Below are positions 5,593 through 35,995 of a stretch of DNA of 64,000 nucleotides, piece after piece (the stretch's first letter is position 1; each line of letters starts with the position of its first letter). The DNA is taken from the IMG/VR virus record IMGVR_UViG_3300017917_001996, positions 186,001 through 250,000 of that record; one strand, 5' to 3'. The notes beneath the pieces were generated by a model. The model was not told the DNA's origin and did not search any database. It saw only the letters and a list, made by a program, of their open reading frames with translations. A program made the translations under genes and the position numbers.

Positions 5593-8500
5593 ATGAAAAT
5601 TGCTATTATAGATATAATTGGGCTTCCGTATGATGGTACAACGGTACACAATCAAGGACTAGGCGGAAGTGAAAGCGCAGTAACATTCATGGCCGAGCAG
5701 CTGGCTCGGTTGAATTTTGATGTAACTGTTTTTAATAACTGCAACATTGATCACGCCCGTCCTGGGGTATATTCGGGTGTACTGTATAGACCACTTGAAG
5801 ATCTAACTCAAGATCACGAGTTTGATATTGTTATTAGCAGCCGAACTATAATTCCATTTGTTGACCCACACAGGTATCACGAACTTAACGACAATCGTGC
5901 ATTTGCACTGCAACACTATAATCTCTATGACCGTGTAGTCTCCCGAGCACAAATGAGAATTCTTTGGATGCATGACACCTTTTGTCTAGGTGATAACATG
6001 ATCGAAGAGTTGGCTGTCAGCAATCGGATTACCGATATCTTTACACTAAGTGACTTTCATCTAACCTATGTGGCTAACTGCCATCACGGACGCCGCAGAA
6101 ATTTTGAAGTACTTAAACCAAAGTTGTTTATTACTAGAAACGGTGCTAACTGTTATCACAAAGAAATCGATCTAAAGAAAAAAGACCCAAATCTCTTTGT
6201 CTATAATGCCAGTGTGACCAAAGGAATGATACCCTTGGTTAATGAAGTTTGGCCAAGATTAAAAGCACAAATACCCGAAGCTCGGTTAAAGGTAATCGGT
6301 GGTTATTACAGATTTAGCGAAAGCTCGGGACCCGATCAGCAAGAACAAGATTGGCGACGAATGGTTGCTGATTCAAGGTATGCTGAGTTGGATATTGAGT
6401 TCACCGGAGTTATTCCACAAAAAGCAATCGGTGACATCTTAGCAGAATCTAATTTTATGATATACCCAACGGCGTTTCCTGAAACGTTTGGAATATCAAC
6501 ATTAGAATCATTACTTTACAATACTCCAGCAATTACTTGTAGATTCGGTGCTCTTGAAGAAATTGCAGTCGAAGGTGCTTGTTACCTAATAGACTATGCC
6601 GTTGAACCTAACAGTTTATTTCCTGATATCAATCGAGTTGAGCAAGTACAAAAATTTGTAGACCTGGCTGTACGTGCTTATCGTGATCCATATCTACATC
6701 AACAAAAACAACAATACTGTAACGTGGTCAAAGACATCGCTGGTTGGGATAGTGTAGCTCTACAGTGGAAGCAGCATTTCTATAAGAAAGCTGGAGAGTA
6801 TTTGTCGCGAGACGAATATCGTGCTGTGAGCAAAATCAATCACAAAGTGCACAAAATTTGGAATCGTCGATACACTAACCCTATAGAGTTTGAACACTAC
6901 AAGCCGGGTAATGAACAACCCATTGTGGTTGTGAGTACATTCTATAACTGTGCCAACTACATTGCACGTTGCATCAAAAGTGTAGCCTCTCAAGATTACG
7001 ATAATTACAGTGTCTACCTGGTTAATGATGCCAGCACAGACAACACGCTAGAAGTAATCAACCAAACATTATCCACATTGCCTGTGGATATTAGATCAAA
7101 GTTTAAAACAATCAATCGTGATACAAATGTTGGTGCAGTAAAAAATCAAGTTGAAGTATTTAGAAGTATTCGAGATCCTGAATCAATTGTTATGATTCTA
7201 GATGGCGACGACAGTTTAATAAACAACAATTCCATTTTTAGCTACTACAATTCTATCTATGATGGAACAACAGAGTTTACCTATGGTAGCTGTTGGAGTA
7301 TGGTTGACCGCATACCTTTGATCAGCCAACCTTATCCAGAACACATCAAACAGTCTCGAGCATATAGAGAGCATAGGTTTAATTGGAATATGCCTTACAC
7401 GCATCTTCGCACATTTAAACAATATTTGATTAACAATATTAACAATTCGGTATTCAAGGATCAAGATGGTAATTGGTTCCGTGCTGGCGGCGATGGTGCT
7501 ACTTTTTATAACTTAATTGAAGCAGCTGATCCAGATAAGGTTAAATGCTTACAGGAAGTTGTCTATAACTACAACGACACTAATCCACTGAATGATTACA
7601 AGATAAATGGTCACGAACAAAATAAAACTGCCGATGCTATTCTAAATCAAAAGAAAACAGAAAGCAAATTGTATTCGGTGATTGTTCCTACAATGTGGAA
7701 GACTGCTAAAACATTTGCAGGCTTTGCCAAATCTTTGTGTGCACACCCGTTAGTGGGCGAATTAATCATTATTAATAATCAAAGTGAGTTGACCCCTGAA
7801 GGACTCAACAATCCTAAAATTAGAATGATCGATCCGGGCAGAAATATCTATGTTAATCCTGCCTGGAACCTAGGAGTAAAAACAAGCAGATACGATCGTT
7901 TGTGTATTGTCAATGACGATGTTATATTTGATCTGACTGTACTAGAACGATTAAAAGATAGGCTAACACCCGAATCAGGAGTATTTGGACTTTGTCCTGG
8001 TGTAGCCGATTTTAACCAACCTCCGGTTATTAACGGTAATATCGATATTATTCCATGGTCTGGCCAACACACCTACGGCTTTGGTTGCTTGATGTTTATA
8101 CACAAAAAGTCTTGGCGAGAGATTCCTGCAGGATTAGAAATTTACTATGGCGACAACTTTATCTTTGACTTGCAGCTACATGAAAAGAAAACTAACTATC
8201 TAATAACCAACATGTTGTTCAAGTCCCAGTTTGCAGCCACGACATCAGACAAATCTATTACTGCTGGATTCTTAGAAAAAGAAACACCGATTTACGAACA
8301 AATAAAAAGCCAAGGATTTACAACTAAAAAACAAGAGATAGCACCTGCTATAAACAAAACCGCAATGCCTAAAAAAAGAATTTTAATTGCTATCCCTACT
8401 GCACGTAACATAGAAGCAGAAACATTTAAAAGCATATATGATTTAGAAATACCCGAAGGGTATACTGCCACGTTCCAATACTTCTATGGTTACAACGTTG

Positions 8501-29262: not shown

Positions 29263-29293
29263 TTTTTTTACCTTACTGGTGATAAATAAACAT

Positions 29294-30060
29294 ATGAATA
29301 ATTACTATGTTTATGCTTATCTCAGAGAAGATGGAACTCCTTACTATATTGGTAAAGGCAATAAAAATCGAGCATGGACTAAAGGTAAAGGGGAAATAGG
29401 AAAACCTAAGGACCTTAACAGAATAATAATTGTCGAAAAGAATTTAACACTAACTGGTAGTTTAGCAATCGAAAGAAGATTAATCAGATGGTATGGTAGA
29501 AAAGATATAGGAACTGGAATACTTCGAAACCGAACCGACGGTGGTGATGGAGGAAAAGGCGCTAATGCCGGCAATAAATTATCAGAAAAAATAAAAAGAA
29601 AATATCATTGTCACACAAAGGCAAAAAGAGAACCCCTATGTCTGAAGAATCAAAAAAGAAACTTTCAGAATCATTAAAGGGCAAAAACCTTGGAAAACAA
29701 AGATCAATTGAAACAAAACTTAAAATGTCTCTAACTCTCAAAGGAAGAAAAAGAGAACCGATGTCGGAAGAGACAAAGAAAAAATTAAGTGAGGCAAATT
29801 TGGGTAAACATATAGAACCATTTACAGAAGAGCATAAACAAAAAATATCAAATGCTCTTAAAGGAAAGCCTAAAAAACGAGAATCTGTAGAAAAACAAAG
29901 ACAAAAAATAATCGGAAGAAAACCAAGTATAAGCGAAAGAGAAGCATATTTAAATGCTTTAGAAAAAGGAAAAACTGTGTGCGAACACTGTAAAAAGATT
30001 TTTACATTGGGTAACTATCGTAGATGGCACGGTGACAAATGTAAGTTAAATCAAATTTAA
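29294..30060 (+). pseudogene. GIY-YIG homing endonuclease with NUMOD3 repeats, broken by a 1-nt frameshift near 29590
   Basis: YYVYAY...PYYIGKG...IERRLI...LRNRTDGG in one frame; NUMOD3 repeats (PMSEExKKKLSE) and CEHC...RWHGDKCK in the -1 frame; late promoter GATAAATA at 29281. Confidence 0.75.
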
Positions 30061-30086: not shown

Positions 30087-31001
30087 ATGAGCGCTGAAAA
30101 TTCTCTAATTAAAAGACCGTATTCATCAGAATCCTATTCTCTCGAACAGTTACAGGAATTTGCTCGATGTGCTGACCCAATCAACGGGCCCAGGCATTTC
30201 ATGAGTAATTACTTTTATATACAGCATCCTATCAAGGGCAGAATGAACTATGTGCCCTTTGAATATCAAGATAGACTAATTGAAACATATCATAATTATA
30301 GATTCAGTATTAGTCTAATGCCTCGACAAACAGGCAAGACAACCAGCGCCGCAGGATATTTATTGTGGTATGCAATGTTTAATCCTGATAGTACTATTCT
30401 TATTGCTGCACACAAATACACAGGCGCTCAGGAAATTATGCAGCGTATTCGTTATGCTTATGAATTGTGTCCTGACTTTATTCGTGCAGGTTGTACCAGT
30501 TATAACAAGGGCAGTATTGAATTTGAAAATGGGTCGCGTATTGTGTCGCAGACAACCACAGAAACAACAGGTCGTGGTATGTCTATTACACTCCTATACT
30601 GTGACGAGTTTGCATTCGTAAGACCTACCATTGCTACAGAATTCTGGACTTCAATTTCGCCTACACTAAGCACTGGTGGTAAGGCTATTATTACTAGTAC
30701 CCCTAACAGTGACGAAGATCAATTTGCCTTGATCTGGAAAGGCAGTCAAAAGTGTATCGACGAGTTTGGCAATAAAACTGAACTTGGTGTAAATGGGTTT
30801 AAAGGTTACCAAGCCAATTGGTGGGAGCATCCTGACCGTGACGAAAAGTGGAAAGCTGAAGAAATAGGTCGTATTGGCGAAGAACGTTTTCGACGTGAGC
30901 ACGGGTGTTTATGTGGTTCATCTCTTATTAAAATAAAACATCCTAATGGTCTAATAGAAGAAGTTACTATAAATGCTTTAAAGTCTCTATTAAGTTCGTA
31001 A
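30087..31001 (+). CDS. terL: Terminase large subunit, N-terminal ATPase half fused to a 31-aa intein N-fragment
   Basis: Walker A MPRQTGKTT, Walker B LLYCDEFAF, ITSTPN; ends RFRREHG|CLCGSSLIKI...SS*. Confidence 0.93.
   Translation: MSAENSLIKRPYSSESYSLEQLQEFARCADPINGPRHFMSNYFYIQHPIKGRMNYVPFEYQDRLIETYHNYRFSISLMPRQTGKTTSAAGYLLWYAMFNPDSTILIAAHKYTGAQEIMQRIRYAYELCPDFIRAGCTSYNKGSIEFENGSRIVSQTTTETTGRGMSITLLYCDEFAFVRPTIATEFWTSISPTLSTGGKAIITSTPNSDEDQFALIWKGSQKCIDEFGNKTELGVNGFKGYQANWWEHPDRDEKWKAEEIGRIGEERFRREHGCLCGSSLIKIKHPNGLIEEVTINALKSLLSS
30906..31001 (+). mobile_element. Split intein N-fragment (31 aa)
   Basis: Starts with Cys1 at the conserved REHG|C site; intein block A-like CLCGSSLIKI; ends in a stop codon. 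Confidence 0.85.
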
Positions 31002-31016
31002 TTTTTGATGAAACGG

Positions 31017-31024
31017 TATAAATA
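31017..31024 (+). promoter_or_regulatory. T4 late promoter TATAAATA
   Basis: Exact consensus, 5 nt before ATG 31030; would drive the HNH gene and the IntC-TerL(C) gene. Confidence 0.75.
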
Positions 31025-31029
31025 ATAAT

Positions 31030-31713
31030 ATGAGAAAGCATAAACATCATATTATTCCTAAGCATGCCGGTGGAACCAATGATCCATCAAATCTAATAGA
31101 ATTGACTATAGAGGAACATGCAGAAGCTCATCGTTTGTTATATGAAACTTACGGTAGGTGGCAAGATCGTGTAGCCTGGCTAAGTTTGTCTGGCATAATG
31201 ACAAACCAAGAAAGGATATATGAGATTTTAAAAAATTCAAATCCCGGCGGGTATAAGCATTCTGAAGAAATAAAAAAACAACTTTCTGAAATGCGTAAAG
31301 GTAATAAAAATCCAATGTTTGGAAAAGTTGCTGCTAATAGTGGAATTAAACGACCTGGTATCGGTGGCCGGAAAAAAGGGTCAGGATGGTCTGACGCAGA
31401 AAGATTAAAACAATTAGAAGTTCGATCTCAACCGGGTTATTATGATTTTACTAAAGATCCGGAGAGGAATAAAAAAATAAGTCAGGCAACTAAAGGTAGA
31501 AAAGGTTCGGCATTAGGAAAAAAATGGTTTCATAATAACGAAATTGAAACATATTCATTTAGTTGTCCTATAGGCTTTATACCTGGTAGGTTACCTGGCA
31601 GAAAATCAAACAAGGAAGGACTGCTCTGGTACAATAACGGAATTGTTAATAAGCAATTTAAAGAAGGACAACAAGTAGAAGGATTTACTCGTGGAAGAAT
31701 TAATAAAAAATAA
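31030..31713 (+). CDS. Free-standing HNH homing endonuclease with NUMOD3 and two C-terminal W-x-N-N..G..(R/P)GR repeats
   Basis: HKHHIIPKHAGGTNDPSNLIELTIEEHAEAH; HSEEIKKQLSE..KGNKNPMFGK. Confidence 0.85.
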   Translation: MRKHKHHIIPKHAGGTNDPSNLIELTIEEHAEAHRLLYETYGRWQDRVAWLSLSGIMTNQERIYEILKNSNPGGYKHSEEIKKQLSEMRKGNKNPMFGKVAANSGIKRPGIGGRKKGSGWSDAERLKQLEVRSQPGYYDFTKDPERNKKISQATKGRKGSALGKKWFHNNEIETYSFSCPIGFIPGRLPGRKSNKEGLLWYNNGIVNKQFKEGQQVEGFTRGRINKK

Positions 31714-32023
31714 CATCGGCCTGCAAATTTTAACAGACACAGGCTGGTCTGATTTTTCAGGACTTCTAGTAAGGGGCAGAAAGAAAACGGTACAAATACA
31801 AACGACAAATAAAAATGTTATATGTACTCTAGATCATAAATTTTTTAAACCTGATTTTACATTTGTTGAAGCACAACAATTAAGACCTCGACAAAAAATT
31901 CTAACAATTAATGGAACAGAACAAGTAGTATCAATTAAGATTCTTGACGAAAGAGAAGTATACGACTTATTTCATGTCTCGAAAAATTATAGATTTTATG
32001 CAAACGGTATACTTGCTAAAAAT
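31691..32023 (+). mobile_element. Split intein C-fragment (111 aa)
   Basis: TxxH at residues 46-49; terminal Asn111 followed by +1 Cys at 32024. Confidence 0.85.
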
Positions 32024-32758
32024 TGCGAATTCTTAATTTTCGACGAAACACTGATCAATGCTTCTACCTTATTAGAAATGCAGGGCACAGACCCAATCGA
32101 AAAACAAGGACAAGTACGCTGGTATCATAAACCCAAACGTGGAAGTACCTATGTGGTTGCCTTAGATCCAAGTCTTGGTACAGGTGGCGATGCTGCTGCT
32201 ATACAAGTTGTTGAACTGCCAGCATGTAAGCAAGTTGCCGAGTGGCAACACAATAAAACAGATATACGTGGGCAAATTCGAGTACTTAAAGAAATCTGTA
32301 ATTATCTTTACGAAGAAATTGGAACACAAAACGACATCTACTACAGTGTTGAGAACAACACCTTAGGAGAAGCTGCCCTAATTGCTATCAGTGAAGTTGG
32401 AGAAGAAAACATACGTGGATCTTTTGCCAGTGAACCGCGTAATGGTCAGTCTCGTAAATATAGAAGAGGTTTTACAACTACAAACAAATCAAAACTAGCA
32501 GCCTGTGCTAAGTTAAAGAGCTTGATAGAAAGCAAGAAGATGACTATATCTAGCTCTAATTTAATTTCGGAACTTAAGAACTTTGTATCTCACGGCAGCT
32601 CGTTTGAAGCTAAAATTGGCGAAACTGACGACCTAGTAATGGCAATGATCCTGGTTATCCGTGTGATACAGTATCTACAGAGCTTTGATCCCACTCTAGA
32701 CAGTTATGTTAAGGATCACGACGAGTTCATAGAACCCATGCCCTTTATTTTGATGTAA
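31691..32758 (+). CDS. terL: Intein C-fragment (111 aa) fused to the terminase large subunit C-terminal nuclease half
   Basis: GTG start with AAGGA SD; CTLDH (block B), VYDL and YANGILAKN|CEFL (blocks F/G); RNase H-like nuclease motifs VALDPS, VENN, TDDLVMA. Confidence 0.9.
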   Translation: MEELIKNNIGLQILTDTGWSDFSGLLVRGRKKTVQIQTTNKNVICTLDHKFFKPDFTFVEAQQLRPRQKILTINGTEQVVSIKILDEREVYDLFHVSKNYRFYANGILAKNCEFLIFDETLINASTLLEMQGTDPIEKQGQVRWYHKPKRGSTYVVALDPSLGTGGDAAAIQVVELPACKQVAEWQHNKTDIRGQIRVLKEICNYLYEEIGTQNDIYYSVENNTLGEAALIAISEVGEENIRGSFASEPRNGQSRKYRRGFTTTNKSKLAACAKLKSLIESKKMTISSSNLISELKNFVSHGSSFEAKIGETDDLVMAMILVIRVIQYLQSFDPTLDSYVKDHDEFIEPMPFILM

Positions 32759-32790: not shown

Positions 32791-34206
32791 ATGAAAAATA
32801 TTGAAAAAATAGCTGAGGAACTGTTTGACAAGATCCGTAGTAGATTTGAAAAGATCACCATTGGTAACGAAGAAGCCAATGAAACTGATGATCCTGCTCA
32901 GGCACGTTTCTTTAATTTTGATTATGTTGACAGGAATGGAAAAAACTACGGCAACATCATGATTAATATCGTTGATGAAGAAAGTTTAAAAATTTACTTC
33001 AGCAAAAACATCAGCGACGAGTTAAGCGAAGAAGAACAACAGGAATGGTACAACTTTCTTAAAGATCTAAGATATTTTGCCAAGCGTAATTTGCTAACAT
33101 TCGATACCAGAGATATTAGCAGAAACAATTTAACTATAAGAGATGTAAAACAAGTAGCCAAAGATACATCAGTTGTGGATTCATCTGCGGCACCTACCAA
33201 TACTGCTACTTCAGTTAACGAAAGCAAGTTATATGGTAGCACAAGAACCAGTATCCAAGAGTTTGGCCCTGTACGTTTAATCATTCGTCACAACGAAGCA
33301 GTTAACGAAGAAATTCCTGGGGCACGTAGCCGCAAGATCCGTGCCTTGTTCATTGAGACAGATCAGGGCGAACGTTTCCGTATGCCGTTTACTAAACTAA
33401 GTGCGGGTCGTGCCATGGCACAACACCTAGCACACGGTGGACAAGTTCATGACGAAGCTGGACATCACATTGTGGAGATGGTCGAAGAAATGAATAGTCT
33501 AGCATTCTTTGCTCGTAACACAAGACATAGGATGTTCGAAGAATCTGAAACACAAGCCATGGTTGAAGCCGCAGTTGAACGTTATCAAACACTACGTTCA
33601 AATCTAAAGCACATGGGCGGCACTCGTGGTTATCAAAACTTTGCTGAAAATTTTGTACCAAATACTCCAGTTGACGAAGAATTTGATTTAGATGCACTTA
33701 AAGAACGTTTTGTTAAAAAGATGTTTGATGAGAGATTAACACAGGCATTACCTTATGTACAACGAGCATATCAGCAAAGACAAGCTGAATCTAATGATCG
33801 ATATGTTAACGAATTTGATACATGGGCCGACGATTTGGTGCAAGAGCAAGACGATGCAGAAACGCAAAATATAATGAAACTTGCCGATGTTATGCAGTCG
33901 CCTATTGCGGTAGGCATTGATGGTATTGATGCAATTAATGCCATCAAAGATTACGTATCCGATGACCAACTCTTTTCGGATATTACAGAACTAAGTCGTA
34001 ATGCTGGAATTGAAGCAGATGCTCGTCCACTAATTAACCAATGGGCAATGGACCAAGGCCATTCGGCATTGTACACCTCGGAACCAACTATTCCGACACA
34101 AGAACCTCCTGTACAAGATGACGATCAGCCGATAGCACCAAAACCGGAAGCAGATATTACAGAATCCGGTTTGCGGATGTTAAAAAGGCTAGCAGGACTA
34201 GCATAA
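32791..34206 (+). CDS. Hypothetical late protein (471 aa), possibly head-associated
   Basis: Late promoter CTAAATA at 32759; VNES and ITES motifs; C-terminal LKRLAGLA. Confidence 0.7.
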   Translation: MKNIEKIAEELFDKIRSRFEKITIGNEEANETDDPAQARFFNFDYVDRNGKNYGNIMINIVDEESLKIYFSKNISDELSEEEQQEWYNFLKDLRYFAKRNLLTFDTRDISRNNLTIRDVKQVAKDTSVVDSSAAPTNTATSVNESKLYGSTRTSIQEFGPVRLIIRHNEAVNEEIPGARSRKIRALFIETDQGERFRMPFTKLSAGRAMAQHLAHGGQVHDEAGHHIVEMVEEMNSLAFFARNTRHRMFEESETQAMVEAAVERYQTLRSNLKHMGGTRGYQNFAENFVPNTPVDEEFDLDALKERFVKKMFDERLTQALPYVQRAYQQRQAESNDRYVNEFDTWADDLVQEQDDAETQNIMKLADVMQSPIAVGIDGIDAINAIKDYVSDDQLFSDITELSRNAGIEADARPLINQWAMDQGHSALYTSEPTIPTQEPPVQDDDQPIAPKPEADITESGLRMLKRLAGLA

Positions 34207-34208
34207 TA

Positions 34209-34235
34209 AAAAGGCAGATCAATTCTGCCTTTTTT
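34209..34235 (+). terminator. Terminator hairpin, copy 1 of a direct repeat
   Basis: AAAAGGCAGA-TCAAT-TCTGCCTTTTTT. Confidence 0.8.
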
Positions 34236-34236
34236 C

Positions 34237-34265
34237 TTGCGTAATCAAAAAACATATTCTATAAT
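34237..34265 (+). promoter_or_regulatory. sigma70-type promoter for the OMP gene
   Basis: TTGCGT-N17-TATAAT. Confidence 0.7.
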
Positions 34266-34301
34266 AGTCGGAGTCTATGACTATTTAGAAGGAAATAAAA
34301 T

Positions 34302-34754
34302 ATGAAGAAAATCGCAATCGCATCTGTAATCGCTTTGGCTGCTACCGCAGCATCTGCATTAGAAGTTGGCACATCTGTCACTCGTGACTACTCTGGCGCA
34401 GAAAACCGTAATGGTGGCGGTATTAACCTAACTCAGCGTTATGGTGCAGTTGGCGTTACAGCCGGCTTTGATCGCTTTACAAAAGGCGAAAATGACCAAG
34501 ATCGTTACAGCGTTGTCGCTGGCTATGATGTTGCTAAGGTTGGCTCATTCACAGTGACTCCTAAGTTAGGTGTTGCGTATTTGAACAACCAAGTTGGTGA
34601 AAACGGCTATGCAATGACCGCAGGTGTTGGTGTTTCTACACCTATTACTAAACGAGTCACCCTAGGGCTAGACCTAGCAAGTCAACGTGGCCAAGACCGC
34701 GTTAAAGCCAGTGATGGCAACACTGTAGCAGTTGGCCTAAGCTATAAGTTCTAA
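34302..34754 (+). CDS. Outer-membrane beta-barrel protein (OmpA/OmpX/Ail-like, about 8 strands) with a signal peptide
   Basis: MKKIAIASVIALAATAASA| Sec signal; alternating amphipathic strands; C-terminal VGLSYKF BAM signal. Confidence 0.85.
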   Translation: MKKIAIASVIALAATAASALEVGTSVTRDYSGAENRNGGGINLTQRYGAVGVTAGFDRFTKGENDQDRYSVVAGYDVAKVGSFTVTPKLGVAYLNNQVGENGYAMTAGVGVSTPITKRVTLGLDLASQRGQDRVKASDGNTVAVGLSYKF

Positions 34755-34775
34755 TTTGAAAATTAGACTTAACCT

Positions 34776-34801
34776 AAAAGGCAGATTTATTCTGCCTTTT
34801 T
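34776..34801 (+). terminator. Terminator hairpin, copy 2 of the direct repeat
   Basis: AAAAGGCAGA-TTTAT-TCTGCCTTTTT. Confidence 0.8.
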
Positions 34802-34803
34802 CT

Positions 34804-34833
34804 TTGACATTGATAAATACTATATCATATACT
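34804..34833 (+). promoter_or_regulatory. Nested sigma70-type (TTGACA-N18-TATACT) and late-type (GATAAATA) promoters for the SSB gene
   Basis: Both motifs visible; GATAAATA at 34812-34819. Confidence 0.6.
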
Positions 34834-34900
34834 AATGCTTGTGCATTATTGTATGATTAGGCACTTTGTAAGACCATCTTAATTTTAAGGAGAAAACATT

Positions 34901-35932
34901 ATGGCAACATCATTGGCAGAAATTCGCGCTCGATTACAAGCGGCTGAGAACCGTGGCTCAACTGGTTCAACTATGAATGGCGAGTCAGCCATTTACGCAC
35001 ACTGGAACATTGCGGAAGGTACCAGTGCAAAAGTTCGATTCCTTCCTGACGCAGATACTAATAACACCTTCTTCTGGGTCGAACGAGCAATGATCAAGCT
35101 CCCATTTAGCGGAGTAAAGGGACAAGTAGATAGCAGACCAGTTGTTGTACAAGTTCCTTGTATGGAAATGTATGGTAAAGATGTTCCGTGTCCAATCCTT
35201 ACTGAAGTCCGTACTTGGTTTAAGGATCCATCACTGGAAGATATGGGTCGCAAGTACTGGAAAAAGAAGTCGTATCTCTTTCAAGGTTTTGTTCGAGAAA
35301 ATCCGCTGGCAGACGATAAAGCACCTGAAAACCCAATTCGTAGATTCATTATTAGTCCACAGATTTTTAATCTCATTAAGGCTGCGCTTATGGATCCTGA
35401 ACTTGAGAATCTTCCGACTGACTATGATGCTGGTTTGGATTTCACTATTACTAAGACTAGCAAGGGTGGGTACAGTGACTACAACACCAGCAAGTGGGCA
35501 AGAAAAGAAACAGCCCTAACATCCACAGAACAAGCTGCTATCGAGAATTACGGTTTGTTTGATCTATCCAGCTTCCTACCTAAGAAGCCTGGCGATGTTG
35601 AACTTAAGGTTATCAAGGAAATGTTTGAGGCCAGCGTTAACGGCGAAGAATACGATCCTGAGCGCTGGGGTCAATACTTCAAGCCAAGTGGTATGAACAT
35701 CGGTGGCAATGCGGCTGTACCAGCATCTGATGTAGATGCCGCAGAAGCAAGTTTTAAAGCCCCTACTACACCGGCACCAACAGCCGCAGCACCTGCTGAA
35801 TCGGCTAGTTCTCCCTGGGAAGACGATGCTGCTGAAGCAGCCGAAGCACCTGTTGTTACACCTAGTGCTAACAAAACATCAAGCCAACGTGCCGAAGACA
35901 TCTTGGCAATGATCCGTAATCGTCAGAAGTAA
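34901..35932 (+). CDS. gp32: Single-stranded DNA-binding protein (T4 gp32-like)
   Basis: AKVRFLP...CMEMYG..CP...YWKKKSY...NLPTDY..G.DF...K...GYSDYNTSKW; acidic C-terminal tail. Confidence 0.88.
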   Translation: MATSLAEIRARLQAAENRGSTGSTMNGESAIYAHWNIAEGTSAKVRFLPDADTNNTFFWVERAMIKLPFSGVKGQVDSRPVVVQVPCMEMYGKDVPCPILTEVRTWFKDPSLEDMGRKYWKKKSYLFQGFVRENPLADDKAPENPIRRFIISPQIFNLIKAALMDPELENLPTDYDAGLDFTITKTSKGGYSDYNTSKWARKETALTSTEQAAIENYGLFDLSSFLPKKPGDVELKVIKEMFEASVNGEEYDPERWGQYFKPSGMNIGGNAAVPASDVDAAEASFKAPTTPAPTAAAPAESASSPWEDDAAEAAEAPVVTPSANKTSSQRAEDILAMIRNRQK

Positions 35933-35945
35933 AATGTAAACTGAG

Positions 35946-35980
35946 AACCCTGCCGGTGCAACACCGGTGGGTTTCTTTCT
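35946..35980 (+). terminator. Probable terminator hairpin
   Basis: AACCC-T-GCCGGTG-CAA-CACCGGT-GGGTT followed by a T-rich tail. Confidence 0.6.
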
Positions 35981-35995
35981 ATAAGGGGAATATCA

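What the first reader, a model, noticed from the sequence alone, without database searches (positions are those of the whole stretch)
34209..34809. Outer-membrane beta-barrel gene as a cassette bounded by duplicated terminator-promoter units
Seen: the OMP gene is flanked by near-identical 25-nt palindromes AAAAGGCAGA-N5-TCTGCCTTTT (34209 and 34776, loops differing at 2 nt). Each runs straight into a -35 box (TTGCGT; TTGACA). Inferred: the gene was acquired by duplication of, or recombination at, the intergenic element upstream of gp32, and can be lost by recombination between the repeats. Known: phage OMPs such as Lom/Ail-type proteins alter the host surface. A small barrel in a lytic-type jumbo phage could be a receptor blocker or decoy.
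Basis: partly seen in the sequence, partly recalled or inferred. Interest (0 to 1): 0.6.

Follow-up and report, generated by a model that had tools for sequence, protein, structure and literature searches.

The report
Phage porin-like gene between duplicated terminators
A small outer-membrane barrel gene has been inserted between two core genes of an uncultured jumbo phage, at a terminator-promoter unit that now stands on both sides of it; this kind of gene shuffling is already known from T4-type phages, so it is a clear example and not a new mechanism.

Summary
A 31-nt direct repeat (hairpin AAAAGGCAGA-N5-TCTGCCTTTT, T-run and the start of a -35 box) lies at 34209-34239 and 34776-34806. It occurs only at these two places in the 250-kb phage contig and brackets a 150-aa gene. 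The product is modelled with good confidence as a signal peptide plus an 8-stranded outer-membrane beta-barrel.

Of 60 relatives that carry both neighbours (a virion protein and a gp32-like SSB), none has the barrel gene there and none has two hairpins. Sixteen have one hairpin. In L033, L042 and L063 it has the same stem and runs into the conserved gp32 promoter. In 27 other phage loci the barrel gene sits in about 18 other contexts, never beside this hairpin, usually with its own sigma-70-type promoter and a terminator.

The gene is therefore a mobile moron that entered at the resident terminator-promoter unit, which became duplicated. This matches the PeSL (promoter-early stem-loop) shuffling model of T4-type phages, here in a PA5oct/Atu_ph07-like jumbo phage. 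Eight-stranded barrels in huge phages are also already described.

Loss by recombination between the repeats, and any receptor-blocking role, remain untested. Verdict: new member of a known kind, moderate-to-low interest.

The parts
32791..34206 (+). 471-aa virion structural protein gene (left core neighbour, 'VSP')
   Evidence: phrog_13484 virion structural protein, E 8.5e-20. Orthologues lie directly upstream of gp32 in relatives.
34209..34239 (+). Left copy of the 31-nt repeat: terminator hairpin 34209-34233, T-run, and start of the -35 box. It serves as the terminator of the virion gene.
   Evidence: fold -14.5 kcal/mol, z -5.5. It starts 2 nt after the VSP stop codon.
34237..34265 (+). 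Sigma-70-type promoter of the barrel gene: TTGCGT, 17 nt, TATAAT
   Evidence: Read. It lies in register with the TTGACA-N17-TATATAAT promoters of the barrel cassettes of other phages (alignment A3). Only 3 of 6 matches in the -35, so the scanner missed it. Function not tested.
34284..34301 (+). Ribosome-binding region (AAGGAAA) of the barrel gene; left limit of DNA homology to other barrel cassettes
   Evidence: blastn homology to L084/L085/L112 starts at 34284. AAAGGAAA-N6-7-ATG is conserved in A3.
34302..34754 (+). 150-aa outer-membrane 8-stranded beta-barrel gene (signal peptide about residues 1-19; C-terminal G-x-x-Y-x-F)
   Evidence: ORF; AF2 pLDDT 85.5, helix 2-18 plus 8 strands; Foldseek matches to NspA/OmpX/OmpA-TM/OprF and to phage OMPs; Pfam YfaZ 18.6 bits, below cut-off; family members hit YfaZ 27/29 and OMP_b-brl 23/29; TIGR01414 autotransporter barrel 18.6 bits, above the cut-off of 16.
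34755..34775 (+). 21-nt spacer after the barrel gene's stop codon; it resembles the spacer that follows the gene in other phages
   Evidence: Alignment A4: TAAtttgaa.. in the window versus L100 TAAtttgaacttta.. and L107 TAAttttagatta... Homology to L100 runs to 34782.
34776..34806 (+). Right copy of the 31-nt repeat: terminator hairpin 34776-34800, T-run, and start of the gp32 -35 box. This is the copy in the resident (orthologous) position.
   Evidence: fold -13.6 kcal/mol. The same hairpin-plus-cTTTGACA unit is seen in the sites of L033, L042 and L063, and with compensatory stem changes in L012 and L031.
34804..34833 (+). gp32 promoter: TTGACA, 18 nt, TATACT
   Evidence: 11 of 12 matches. 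TTGAC-..ATAAATA..-TATACT is conserved in relatives.
34834..34900 (+). Conserved gp32 leader (GTGC..GCAC stem, AAGACCATCTTAA, AAGGAG)
   Evidence: Alignment A2. No Rfam family reaches its threshold.
34901..35932 (+). gp32-like single-stranded-DNA-binding protein gene (right core neighbour)
   Evidence: phrog_1192, E 2.4e-68. About 55% identity to the PA5oct-group SSB.

Best explanation
The 150-aa gene is a moron: a self-contained transcription unit with a sigma-70-type promoter, a ribosome-binding site, an 8-stranded outer-membrane barrel ORF and a terminator. It moves among related freshwater jumbo phages. In this phage lineage it entered the short spacer between two core genes (a virion protein and the gp32-like SSB). 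The entry point was the resident composite unit 'terminator hairpin + T-run + -35 box of the gp32 promoter'. Recombination within that unit left one copy on each side of the insert. The inferred joints lie at the hairpin/AAAAGGC start on the right and at the T-run/TTG of the -35 box on the left. As a result the virion gene is still terminated, the barrel gene is read from a promoter whose -35 abuts the left hairpin, and the right hairpin insulates gp32, which keeps its own conserved promoter and leader. This is the pattern described for PeSL (promoter-early stem-loop) cassettes of T4-type phages, where an ORF flanked by two PeSLs in one phage corresponds to a single PeSL in its relative. Shown here: the repeat, its uniqueness, the single-copy or empty sites in relatives, the mobility of the gene, and the fold class. 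Inferred: the recombination mechanism, the activity of the promoters and terminators, outer-membrane localisation, and reversibility.
For: The repeat is real and occurs only twice in the contig. The structure is confirmed in an independent assembly of the probable source run. None of 80 gp32-relative loci has the barrel gene next to gp32. Of 60 loci with both neighbours, 40 have a 93-192-nt spacer, 20 carry other inserts, 0 have two hairpins and 16 have one. The AAGGCAGA..TCTGCCTT hairpin occurs in other loci only in front of the gp32 promoter (L033, L042, L063) and never next to the barrel gene. L012 and L031 carry the compensatory variant GGCACA/TGTGCC. The barrel gene occurs in 27 other phage loci in about 18 flank combinations, and the window's combination is unique. 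In 11 of those contexts it has a TTGAC(A/T)-..-TATA(A/C)T promoter and in about 16 a downstream terminator. In one 260-kb relative (G001) the barrel protein is 90% identical, against 63% for gp32. There it sits about 30 kb from gp32, and the region upstream of gp32 has no hairpin. Other lineages carry inserts either just before the hairpin (L027, L063) or just after it (L035, L036, L038, L046), so both edges of the hairpin are recombination joints. The PeSL model and its defining features come from PMC2839356 and PMC4122927.
Against: Only two copies of this unit exist in 250 kb, whereas PeSLs form a family of about 50 similar motifs per genome. Homology is only 31 nt at 87%, which is short for homologous recombination, so microhomology or illegitimate joining cannot be excluded. 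The left copy sits 2 nt after the VSP stop codon, while relatives have 16-22 nt there, so the left joint is not a simple copy of the ancestral spacer. No donor carrying this hairpin next to the barrel gene was found. No deletion or circle junction was seen, although contigs cannot show one. The -35 of the barrel gene's promoter is weak (TTGCGT).
Confidence: 0.72

Rival explanations
1. There was no duplication at insertion. The cassette arrived with its own AAAAGGC...GCCTTTT-type terminator next to the resident terminator, and the two similar hairpins were later homogenised by gene conversion, or one was copied over the other.
For: The barrel gene's own terminators in other phages begin with AAAAGGC and end with GCCTTTT(T) (L097, L100, L101, L084). 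That similarity could seed conversion. The 21-nt spacer before the right hairpin looks cassette-derived.
Against: This would place both hairpins downstream of the barrel gene, or need a further event to put one upstream. The left copy lies upstream of the barrel gene's promoter, directly after the virion gene. The repeat also includes the T-run and the TTG of the -35 box, not only the stem.
Confidence: 0.15
2. The insert was placed by a dedicated enzyme, such as a transposase, a homing endonuclease or a site-specific recombinase, and the repeat is a target-site duplication or attachment site.
For: Free-standing HNH and NUMOD3 endonuclease genes lie 2.5-5 kb upstream. The VSP-gp32 and gp32-UvsX spacers are insertion hot spots in relatives.
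Against: The 567-bp unit encodes nothing but the barrel protein. A 31-nt imperfect repeat made of a terminator and a promoter is not a typical target-site duplication. Barrel-gene insertions elsewhere have no such repeat, and their two flanking hairpins differ from each other.
Confidence: 0.06
3. The barrel gene is ancestral at this junction and was lost in all sampled relatives by recombination between the repeats.
For: Deletion between direct repeats would leave exactly the single-hairpin site seen in L033 and L042.
Against: 0 of 80 relatives keep the gene there. 27 other barrel loci are all in other contexts. In relatives the gene lies near a gene cluster that the window's phage has at contig position 6.4-8.3 kb without the barrel gene. 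This rival would need many independent losses against one gain.
Confidence: 0.04
4. Assembly artefact: a repeat-induced mis-join placed an unrelated barrel-gene contig between the two hairpins.
For: The contig comes from a metagenome, and the joins coincide with a repeat.
Against: The longest exact shared runs are only 11 and 13 nt, well below assembler k-mer sizes. An independent Logan contig of the same run spans 32800-35175 with 0 differences, at an even depth of about 101.
Confidence: 0.02

Closest known systems
PeSL (promoter-early stem-loop) regulatory cassettes of T4-type phages (Arbiol et al. 2010, PMC2839356; Comeau et al. 2014, PMC4122927)
   Same: A composite unit of a stem-loop terminator and a sigma-70-like promoter sits between genes. 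A variable ORF is flanked by two such units in one phage, while the relative has a single unit at the same place. The insert brings or keeps its own promoter and terminator. The same excision and insertion by recombination between units can be proposed.
   Different: The host genome is a PA5oct/Atu_ph07-like jumbo phage, not a T4-type phage. The unit is not a genome-wide repeated family: there are only 2 same-sequence copies in 250 kb. The shared stretch is 31 nt rather than about 100 bp. The site lies between two core genes and not in a hyperplastic region. Mini-circles were not tested.
Morons of lambdoid phages (autonomous promoter-gene-terminator units between conserved genes; the concept is recalled from the HK97/HK022 comparisons and was not checked in a paper here)
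   Same: A single extra gene with its own promoter and terminator is inserted between genes that are adjacent in relatives. The product is a cell-envelope protein.
   Different: This is a lytic-type jumbo phage and the expression would be early, not from a prophage. The flanking duplication of the resident terminator-promoter unit is not part of the moron definition.
Eight-stranded outer-membrane barrels encoded by phages: lambda Lom, and the OMPs of huge phages (bioRxiv 10.64898/2026.10.24.761521)
   Same: Signal peptide plus a small 8-stranded barrel. The preprint reports 1,603 barrel OMPs in 18% of huge-phage genomes, with the 8-stranded class the most abundant, and proposes Lom-like receptor masking.
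   Different: There is no sequence membership in Ail_Lom. The barrel is very small (about 130 mature residues) with short gaps between strands in the model. No close bacterial homologue was found in the pattern scan of 185,579 species genomes.
YfaZ / OMP_b-brl (Pfam PF07437 / PF13505) small outer-membrane barrels of Proteobacteria
   Same: These are the best sequence-family matches for the phage family (27/29 and 23/29 members).
   Different: The window's own protein scores below the Pfam cut-off (18.6 against 23 bits). YfaZ itself has no known function.

Membership tests
PeSL cassettes (T4-type phages) | Sigma-70-like promoter (-35 and -10 boxes) in the unit | tested here: met
   Right unit: TTGACA-18-TATACT, 11/12 matches. 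Left unit: TTGCGT-17-TATAAT. These are consensus matches only; activity was not tested.
PeSL cassettes (T4-type phages) | Stable stem-loop next to or overlapping the promoter, acting as a terminator or attenuator | tested here: met
   10-11-bp stems at -14.5 and -13.6 kcal/mol, each followed by a U-run and abutting the -35 box. Termination was not assayed.
PeSL cassettes (T4-type phages) | Many copies (about 50 per genome) of a conserved ~100-bp motif, concentrated in hyperplastic regions | tested here: not met
   There are only 2 copies of this sequence in 250 kb. Other terminator-to--35 units exist (for example at contig 238905 and 3966) but have unrelated stems.
PeSL cassettes (T4-type phages) | A variable ORF flanked by two units where a relative has a single unit | tested here: met
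   The window has two units. L033 and L042 have one same-stem unit in an empty site; L063 has one in front of gp32 beside a different insert. 0 of 60 relatives have two.
PeSL cassettes (T4-type phages) | Resident in a T4-type myovirus genome | tested here: not met
   The nearest named phages by SSB are the PA5oct group, Phosso and Atu_ph07, at 52-57% identity.
PeSL cassettes (T4-type phages) | Excised mini-circles or deletion variants in the population | not testable with these tools
   Only assembled contigs of the source run are held. No such joint appears among those listed, and contigs drop rare variants.
Moron | Extra gene between genes that are adjacent in relatives, with its own promoter and terminator | tested here: met
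   adjacency in relatives; promoter and terminator by sequence.
Eight-stranded outer-membrane beta-barrel (OmpX/OmpA-TM/NspA fold class) | N-terminal signal peptide, 8 antiparallel amphipathic strands, C-terminal aromatic beta-signal | tested here: met
   MKKIAIASVIALAATAASA|LE; 8 strands, pLDDT 85.5. TM-score by query/target: 0.68/0.74 to OmpA-TM 1qjp and 0.71/0.78 to OprF-N 4rlc. The C-terminus is G-L-S-Y-K-F, with F150 invariant in the family. Localisation was not tested.
Ail/Lom family (Pfam PF06316) | Significant match to the family profile | tested here: not met
   No Ail_Lom hit at E<=0.01 for the window protein or for any of the 29 family members. Only fold-level similarity to Ail 2n2l.
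YfaZ (Pfam PF07437) | Score at or above the Pfam gathering cut-off (23 bits) | tested here: inconclusive
   The window protein scores 18.6 bits, E 0.0016. 27 of 29 relatives match at E<=0.01, best 1.7e-06.
Intrinsic (Rho-independent) terminator | G+C-containing stem-loop followed by a U-run at the end of a gene | tested here: met
   Stem changes in orthologous hairpins of relatives are compensatory: GGCAGA/TCTGCC, GGCACA/TGTGCC, GGCACT/AGTGCC, GGCGAA/TTCGCC.

The most novel reading that the evidence does not exclude
Terminator-promoter units act as general recombination joints, a PeSL equivalent, in the PA5oct/Atu_ph07/Rak2-like jumbo phages as well. Modular shuffling by such units would then be a common property of large lytic phages that rely on host sigma-70 RNA polymerase, not a T4-lineage peculiarity. 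The family of minimal 130-residue barrels they carry would be a phage-specific early surface modifier, for example for superinfection exclusion, with no close bacterial counterpart.
Probability: 0.35. Interest if true: 0.45.

Novelty: new member of a known kind. Interest (0 to 1): 0.33.

Why it matters
This is a well-resolved natural example of how a large phage gains an accessory gene without disturbing its core genes. The insert lands on a terminator-promoter unit, and that unit is duplicated, so that upstream termination, the new gene's expression and the downstream gene's regulation are all kept. It extends the PeSL-type shuffling pattern from T4-type phages to a different jumbo-phage lineage. 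It also identifies the VSP-gp32 and gp32-UvsX spacers as insertion hot spots, which helps when annotating related metagenomic phages and when choosing tolerant insertion sites. The cargo is a very small, abundant barrel family with 575 metagenomic homologues in the word search. It would be a tractable candidate for testing whether early phage barrels change adsorption of other phages. None of this overturns current understanding.

Tried and rejected
- A megablast of the 4.3-kb region and a tblastn of the barrel protein against 50,697 deposited phage genomes found nothing. Only the SSB found distant named relatives.
- The simple terminator scanner missed both hairpins because their A/T stem ends use up the T-tail. 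I therefore used my own hairpin scans.
- For deletion-junction reads, only Logan contigs were available. The probable source run holds the full structure. No 34209-to-34776 joint appears among the joints listed, though 59 more were not shown. This is no evidence against rare deletions.
- A pattern scan of 185,579 bacterial and archaeal species genomes with the family alignment found no relative. This scan is insensitive, so it gives no host and no bacterial donor.
- Rfam gave only sub-threshold matches to sRNA terminator tails.
- A profile search against PDB sequences gave only a porin at E 0.2; the fold search was needed.
- A 5'-UTR hairpin of the barrel mRNA is weak in the window (-6.4 kcal/mol, z -1.8) and overlaps the -10 box, so I claim no RNA element there.
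- I rejected 'Lom/Ail family member', an assembly artefact, and the idea that the hairpin travels with the barrel cassette.
No complex prediction was run, because I make no binding claim.

Full report
**Where the window lies**

The window is bases 186001-250000 of a 250,289-bp IMG/VR virus contig, estimated 71% complete. It comes from a pond metagenome. Its SSB is about 55% identical to that of the Pseudomonas PA5oct group, 56% to Sinorhizobium phage Phosso and 52% to Agrobacterium phage Atu_ph07. It is therefore an uncultured jumbo phage of that broad lineage. No deposited phage is close at the DNA level.

**The observation**

- The sequence shows AAAAGGCAGA-TCAAT-TCTGCCTTTT at 34209-34233 and AAAAGGCAGA-TTTAT-TCTGCCTTTT at 34776-34800.
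- Allowing 3 mismatches, these are the only two matches in the window (0 in 100 shuffles). They are also the only two in the whole contig.
- The repeat finder extends them to 31 nt at 87% identity, 34209-34239 and 34776-34806, 567 nt apart. The repeat thus covers the stem-loop, the T-run and the first bases of a -35 box.
- Both fold as strong hairpins followed by a U-run: -14.5 and -13.6 kcal/mol, z -5.5 and -4.9.
- The left copy runs into TTGCGT (34237-42), 17 nt, TATAAT (34260-65). The right copy runs into TTGACA (34804-09), 18 nt, TATACT (34828-33), an 11/12 match.
- My survey of perfect-stem hairpins with T-rich tails gave 29 rows over both strands, about 22 distinct hairpins. No other two share a stem.
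- A separately assembled contig of the probable source run covers 32800-35175 without a single difference at an even depth. The longest exact runs shared by the repeats are 11 and 13 nt. A mis-assembly is therefore excluded for practical purposes.

**The genes**

- 32791-34206 encodes a 471-aa virion structural protein (phrog_13484).
- 34901-35932 encodes the gp32-like SSB (phrog_1192), followed by a UvsX-like recombinase.
- Between the first two lies a 150-aa ORF, 34302-34754.
  - With an alignment of 29 relatives, AlphaFold2 gives pLDDT 85.5: a signal helix (residues 2-18) and eight long antiparallel strands.
  - The best solved matches are NspA, OmpX, the OmpA transmembrane domain (TM 0.68/0.74), the OprF N-terminal barrel (0.71/0.78) and Ail.
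  - The best viral matches are annotated phage outer-membrane barrels.
  - The sequence has an A-S-A|L signal-peptidase site and ends G-L-S-Y-K-F, with the terminal F invariant. By general knowledge of OMP biogenesis, this is the usual C-terminal barrel-assembly signal.
- At the sequence level the family matches YfaZ (27/29 members) and OMP_b-brl (23/29), and never Ail_Lom.

A scan of viral contigs with the SSB gave 80 loci at 63-78% identity. A scan with the barrel protein gave 27 loci at 37-90%.

- Mapping all five local proteins on all loci shows two things. No SSB locus has the barrel gene. No barrel locus has the virion gene, SSB or UvsX within 6 kb.
- In 60 loci that hold both the virion gene and the SSB gene, 40 have a spacer of only 93-192 nt. 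The other 20 hold unrelated inserts of 435-2877 nt. The junction is a hot spot.
- With strict criteria, 16 of the 60 have exactly one terminator hairpin in the spacer, 44 have none and none has two.
- The hairpins belong to one evolving family: AAAAGGCAGA/TCTGCCTTTT in L033, L042 and L063; GGCACA/TGTGCC in L012 and L031; GGCACT/AGTGCC in L035, L036 and L046; GGCGAA/TTCGCC in L027. The stem changes are compensatory.
- Where the unit is complete, the hairpin is followed at once by (c)TTTGAC, the -35 of a promoter, and by a leader conserved across relatives.
- Across all 113 loci, the motif AAGGCAGA..TCTGCCTT occurs only in the window (twice) and in L033, L042 and L063 (once each). In those three it is always in front of the gp32 promoter, and it is never beside a barrel gene.
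- The unit therefore belongs to the gp32 upstream region, and the window's phage has it twice.

**The cargo is mobile**

- The 27 barrel loci, plus two contigs found by exact-protein look-up, fall into about 18 combinations of flanking gene families. The window's combination is unique.
- In 11 contexts the gene has a TTGAC(A/T)-..-TATA(A/C)T promoter, often an ATGAC-N4-6-GTCAT palindrome right after the -10, and an AAAGGAAA ribosome-binding site. In about 16 it is followed after about 20 nt by its own terminator.
- In those phages the upstream and downstream hairpins differ from each other.
- DNA homology between the window and the nearest cassettes runs from 34284 (the ribosome-binding site) to about 34760.
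- The window's promoter lies in register with the cassette promoters. The 21-nt spacer after the stop codon resembles the cassette spacer.
- In a 260-kb relative (G001) the barrel protein is 90% identical while the SSB is only 63% identical. There the barrel gene lies about 30 kb from the SSB gene, and the region upstream of gp32 has no hairpin.
- In G001 and three other loci (L091, L105, L111) the barrel gene lies 0.5-2 kb upstream of genes that the window's phage has at contig positions 6.4-8.3 kb, without a barrel gene there.
- The simplest reading is one gain, or relocation, at the VSP-gp32 junction in this lineage.

**How it most likely happened and works**

The left joint lies between the hairpin and the -10 of the barrel promoter. 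The repeat ends at the TTG of the -35, whose remaining bases (CGT) are non-consensus. The right joint lies at the start of the hairpin. There the cassette's own terminators in other phages share AAAAGGC...GCCTTTT with the resident one.

Other lineages have inserts immediately before the hairpin (L027, L063) or immediately after it (L035, L036, L038, L046). Both edges of this hairpin are therefore recurrent joints.

I infer recombination within the terminator-promoter unit, either short-homology recombination or template switching at the hairpin. This duplicated the unit around the insert. The functional outcome follows from the anatomy:
- the left copy terminates the virion gene;
- the barrel gene is read from its own promoter;
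- the right copy stops read-through into gp32;
- gp32 keeps its conserved promoter and leader.

Activity of these signals, and reversibility, are inferred and not shown.

**Comparison with what is known**

This is the pattern described for PeSLs of T4-type phages: composite sigma-70 promoter plus stem-loop terminator units, shown experimentally to terminate and to promote transcription. ORFan192 of RB49 is flanked by two PeSLs where phage phi1 has one. Recombination between units is proposed to excise and insert genes through mini-circles (PMC2839356; extended to other T4-likes in PMC4122927).

The window meets four features:
- a promoter in the unit;
- a stem-loop in the unit;
- the two-units-versus-one pattern;
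- the insert keeping its own signals.

It fails two:
- a genome-wide family of about 100-bp repeats;
- a T4-type host genome.

I therefore file it as 'works like a PeSL pair' and not as a member of the PeSL family.

The cargo is also not new in kind. A 2026 preprint counts 1,603 barrel OMPs in 18% of huge-phage genomes. The 8-stranded class is the commonest, is rarely next to envelope genes and is often highly transcribed. The authors propose Lom-like receptor masking. For this protein that role is untested. The barrel is very small, with short gaps between strands in the model, so I give the receptor-blocker idea no more than the status of a hypothesis.

**What could not be done**

- Raw reads were not available, so loss by recombination between the repeats is untested.
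- No bacterial relative, and hence no host or donor, was found in a pattern scan.
- No step needed referral.

**Verdict**

Reversibility and function are unproven. This is a new member of a known kind, with interest about 0.33.

Noticed in passing
window 30087-32758: The large terminase gene is in two pieces. The N-part, 30087-31001, carries Terminase_6N and ends with an intein-N-like CLCGSSLIKIK. The C-part, 31691-32758, has a weak HINT/intein-C piece followed by Terminase_6C. A free-standing HNH+NUMOD3 endonuclease gene (31030-31713) lies between them. This looks like a split intein with a free-standing homing endonuclease (a 'fractured gene'). In most relatives the match starts at about residue 111 of the C-part, so they lack the insert; L020 and L033 match from residue 2-9.
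   Followed up: partly
window 29279-30060: Two overlapping ORFs lie just upstream of the terminase gene. One starts like a GIY-YIG endonuclease (YVYAYL..YYIGKG; no Pfam hit). The other has three NUMOD3 motifs. This may be a frameshifted or two-part homing endonuclease.
   Followed up: partly
window 34834-34900 and the same place in L004-L083: The gp32 leader is conserved across relatives at 63-78% protein identity: a GTGC...TAGGCAC stem, AAGACCATCTTAA, then AAGGAG. It is a candidate translational operator, by analogy with T4 gene 32 autoregulation (from memory). No Rfam match.
   Followed up: partly
L091, L093, L095, L097, L100-L102, L105, L107, L108 (about 30 nt upstream of the barrel gene's start codon): A palindrome, ATGAC-N4-6-GTCAT (or GATGA..TCATC), sits right after the -10 box of the barrel gene's promoter in many phages. 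It could be an operator or a 5'-terminal mRNA stem. It is degenerate in the window.
   Followed up: partly
window 35933-35995 and relatives: The gp32-UvsX spacer is a second insertion hot spot. It is 63 nt in the window, with a terminator at 35949-35971, but ranges from about 20 nt to about 4.3 kb in relatives.
   Followed up: no
G000 contig 6406-8348 (outside the window): A cluster of peroxiredoxin (AhpC)-like, AhpD-like and SGNH-hydrolase-like genes (names read by eye from the translations, not scanned). It is homologous to genes that lie just downstream of the barrel gene in L085, L091, L105 and L111. This is the barrel gene's usual neighbourhood, and in this phage it lacks the gene.
   Followed up: partly
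L009/L011, L035/L036, L038/L046, L043/L056/L058, L059/L065, L060, L063, L066/L081: The VSP-gp32 junction of relatives carries at least eight different unrelated cargo sets, 1-3 genes of 187-450 aa each. None has a duplicated hairpin.
   Followed up: partly
Read laying on window 34776-35691, run X5 record 17: A contig about 89% identical, from an unrelated aquatic metagenome, starts matching the window exactly at the first base of the right hairpin (34776). Its 133 upstream bases do not align. This is consistent with the hairpin being a boundary of conserved sequence.
   Followed up: no
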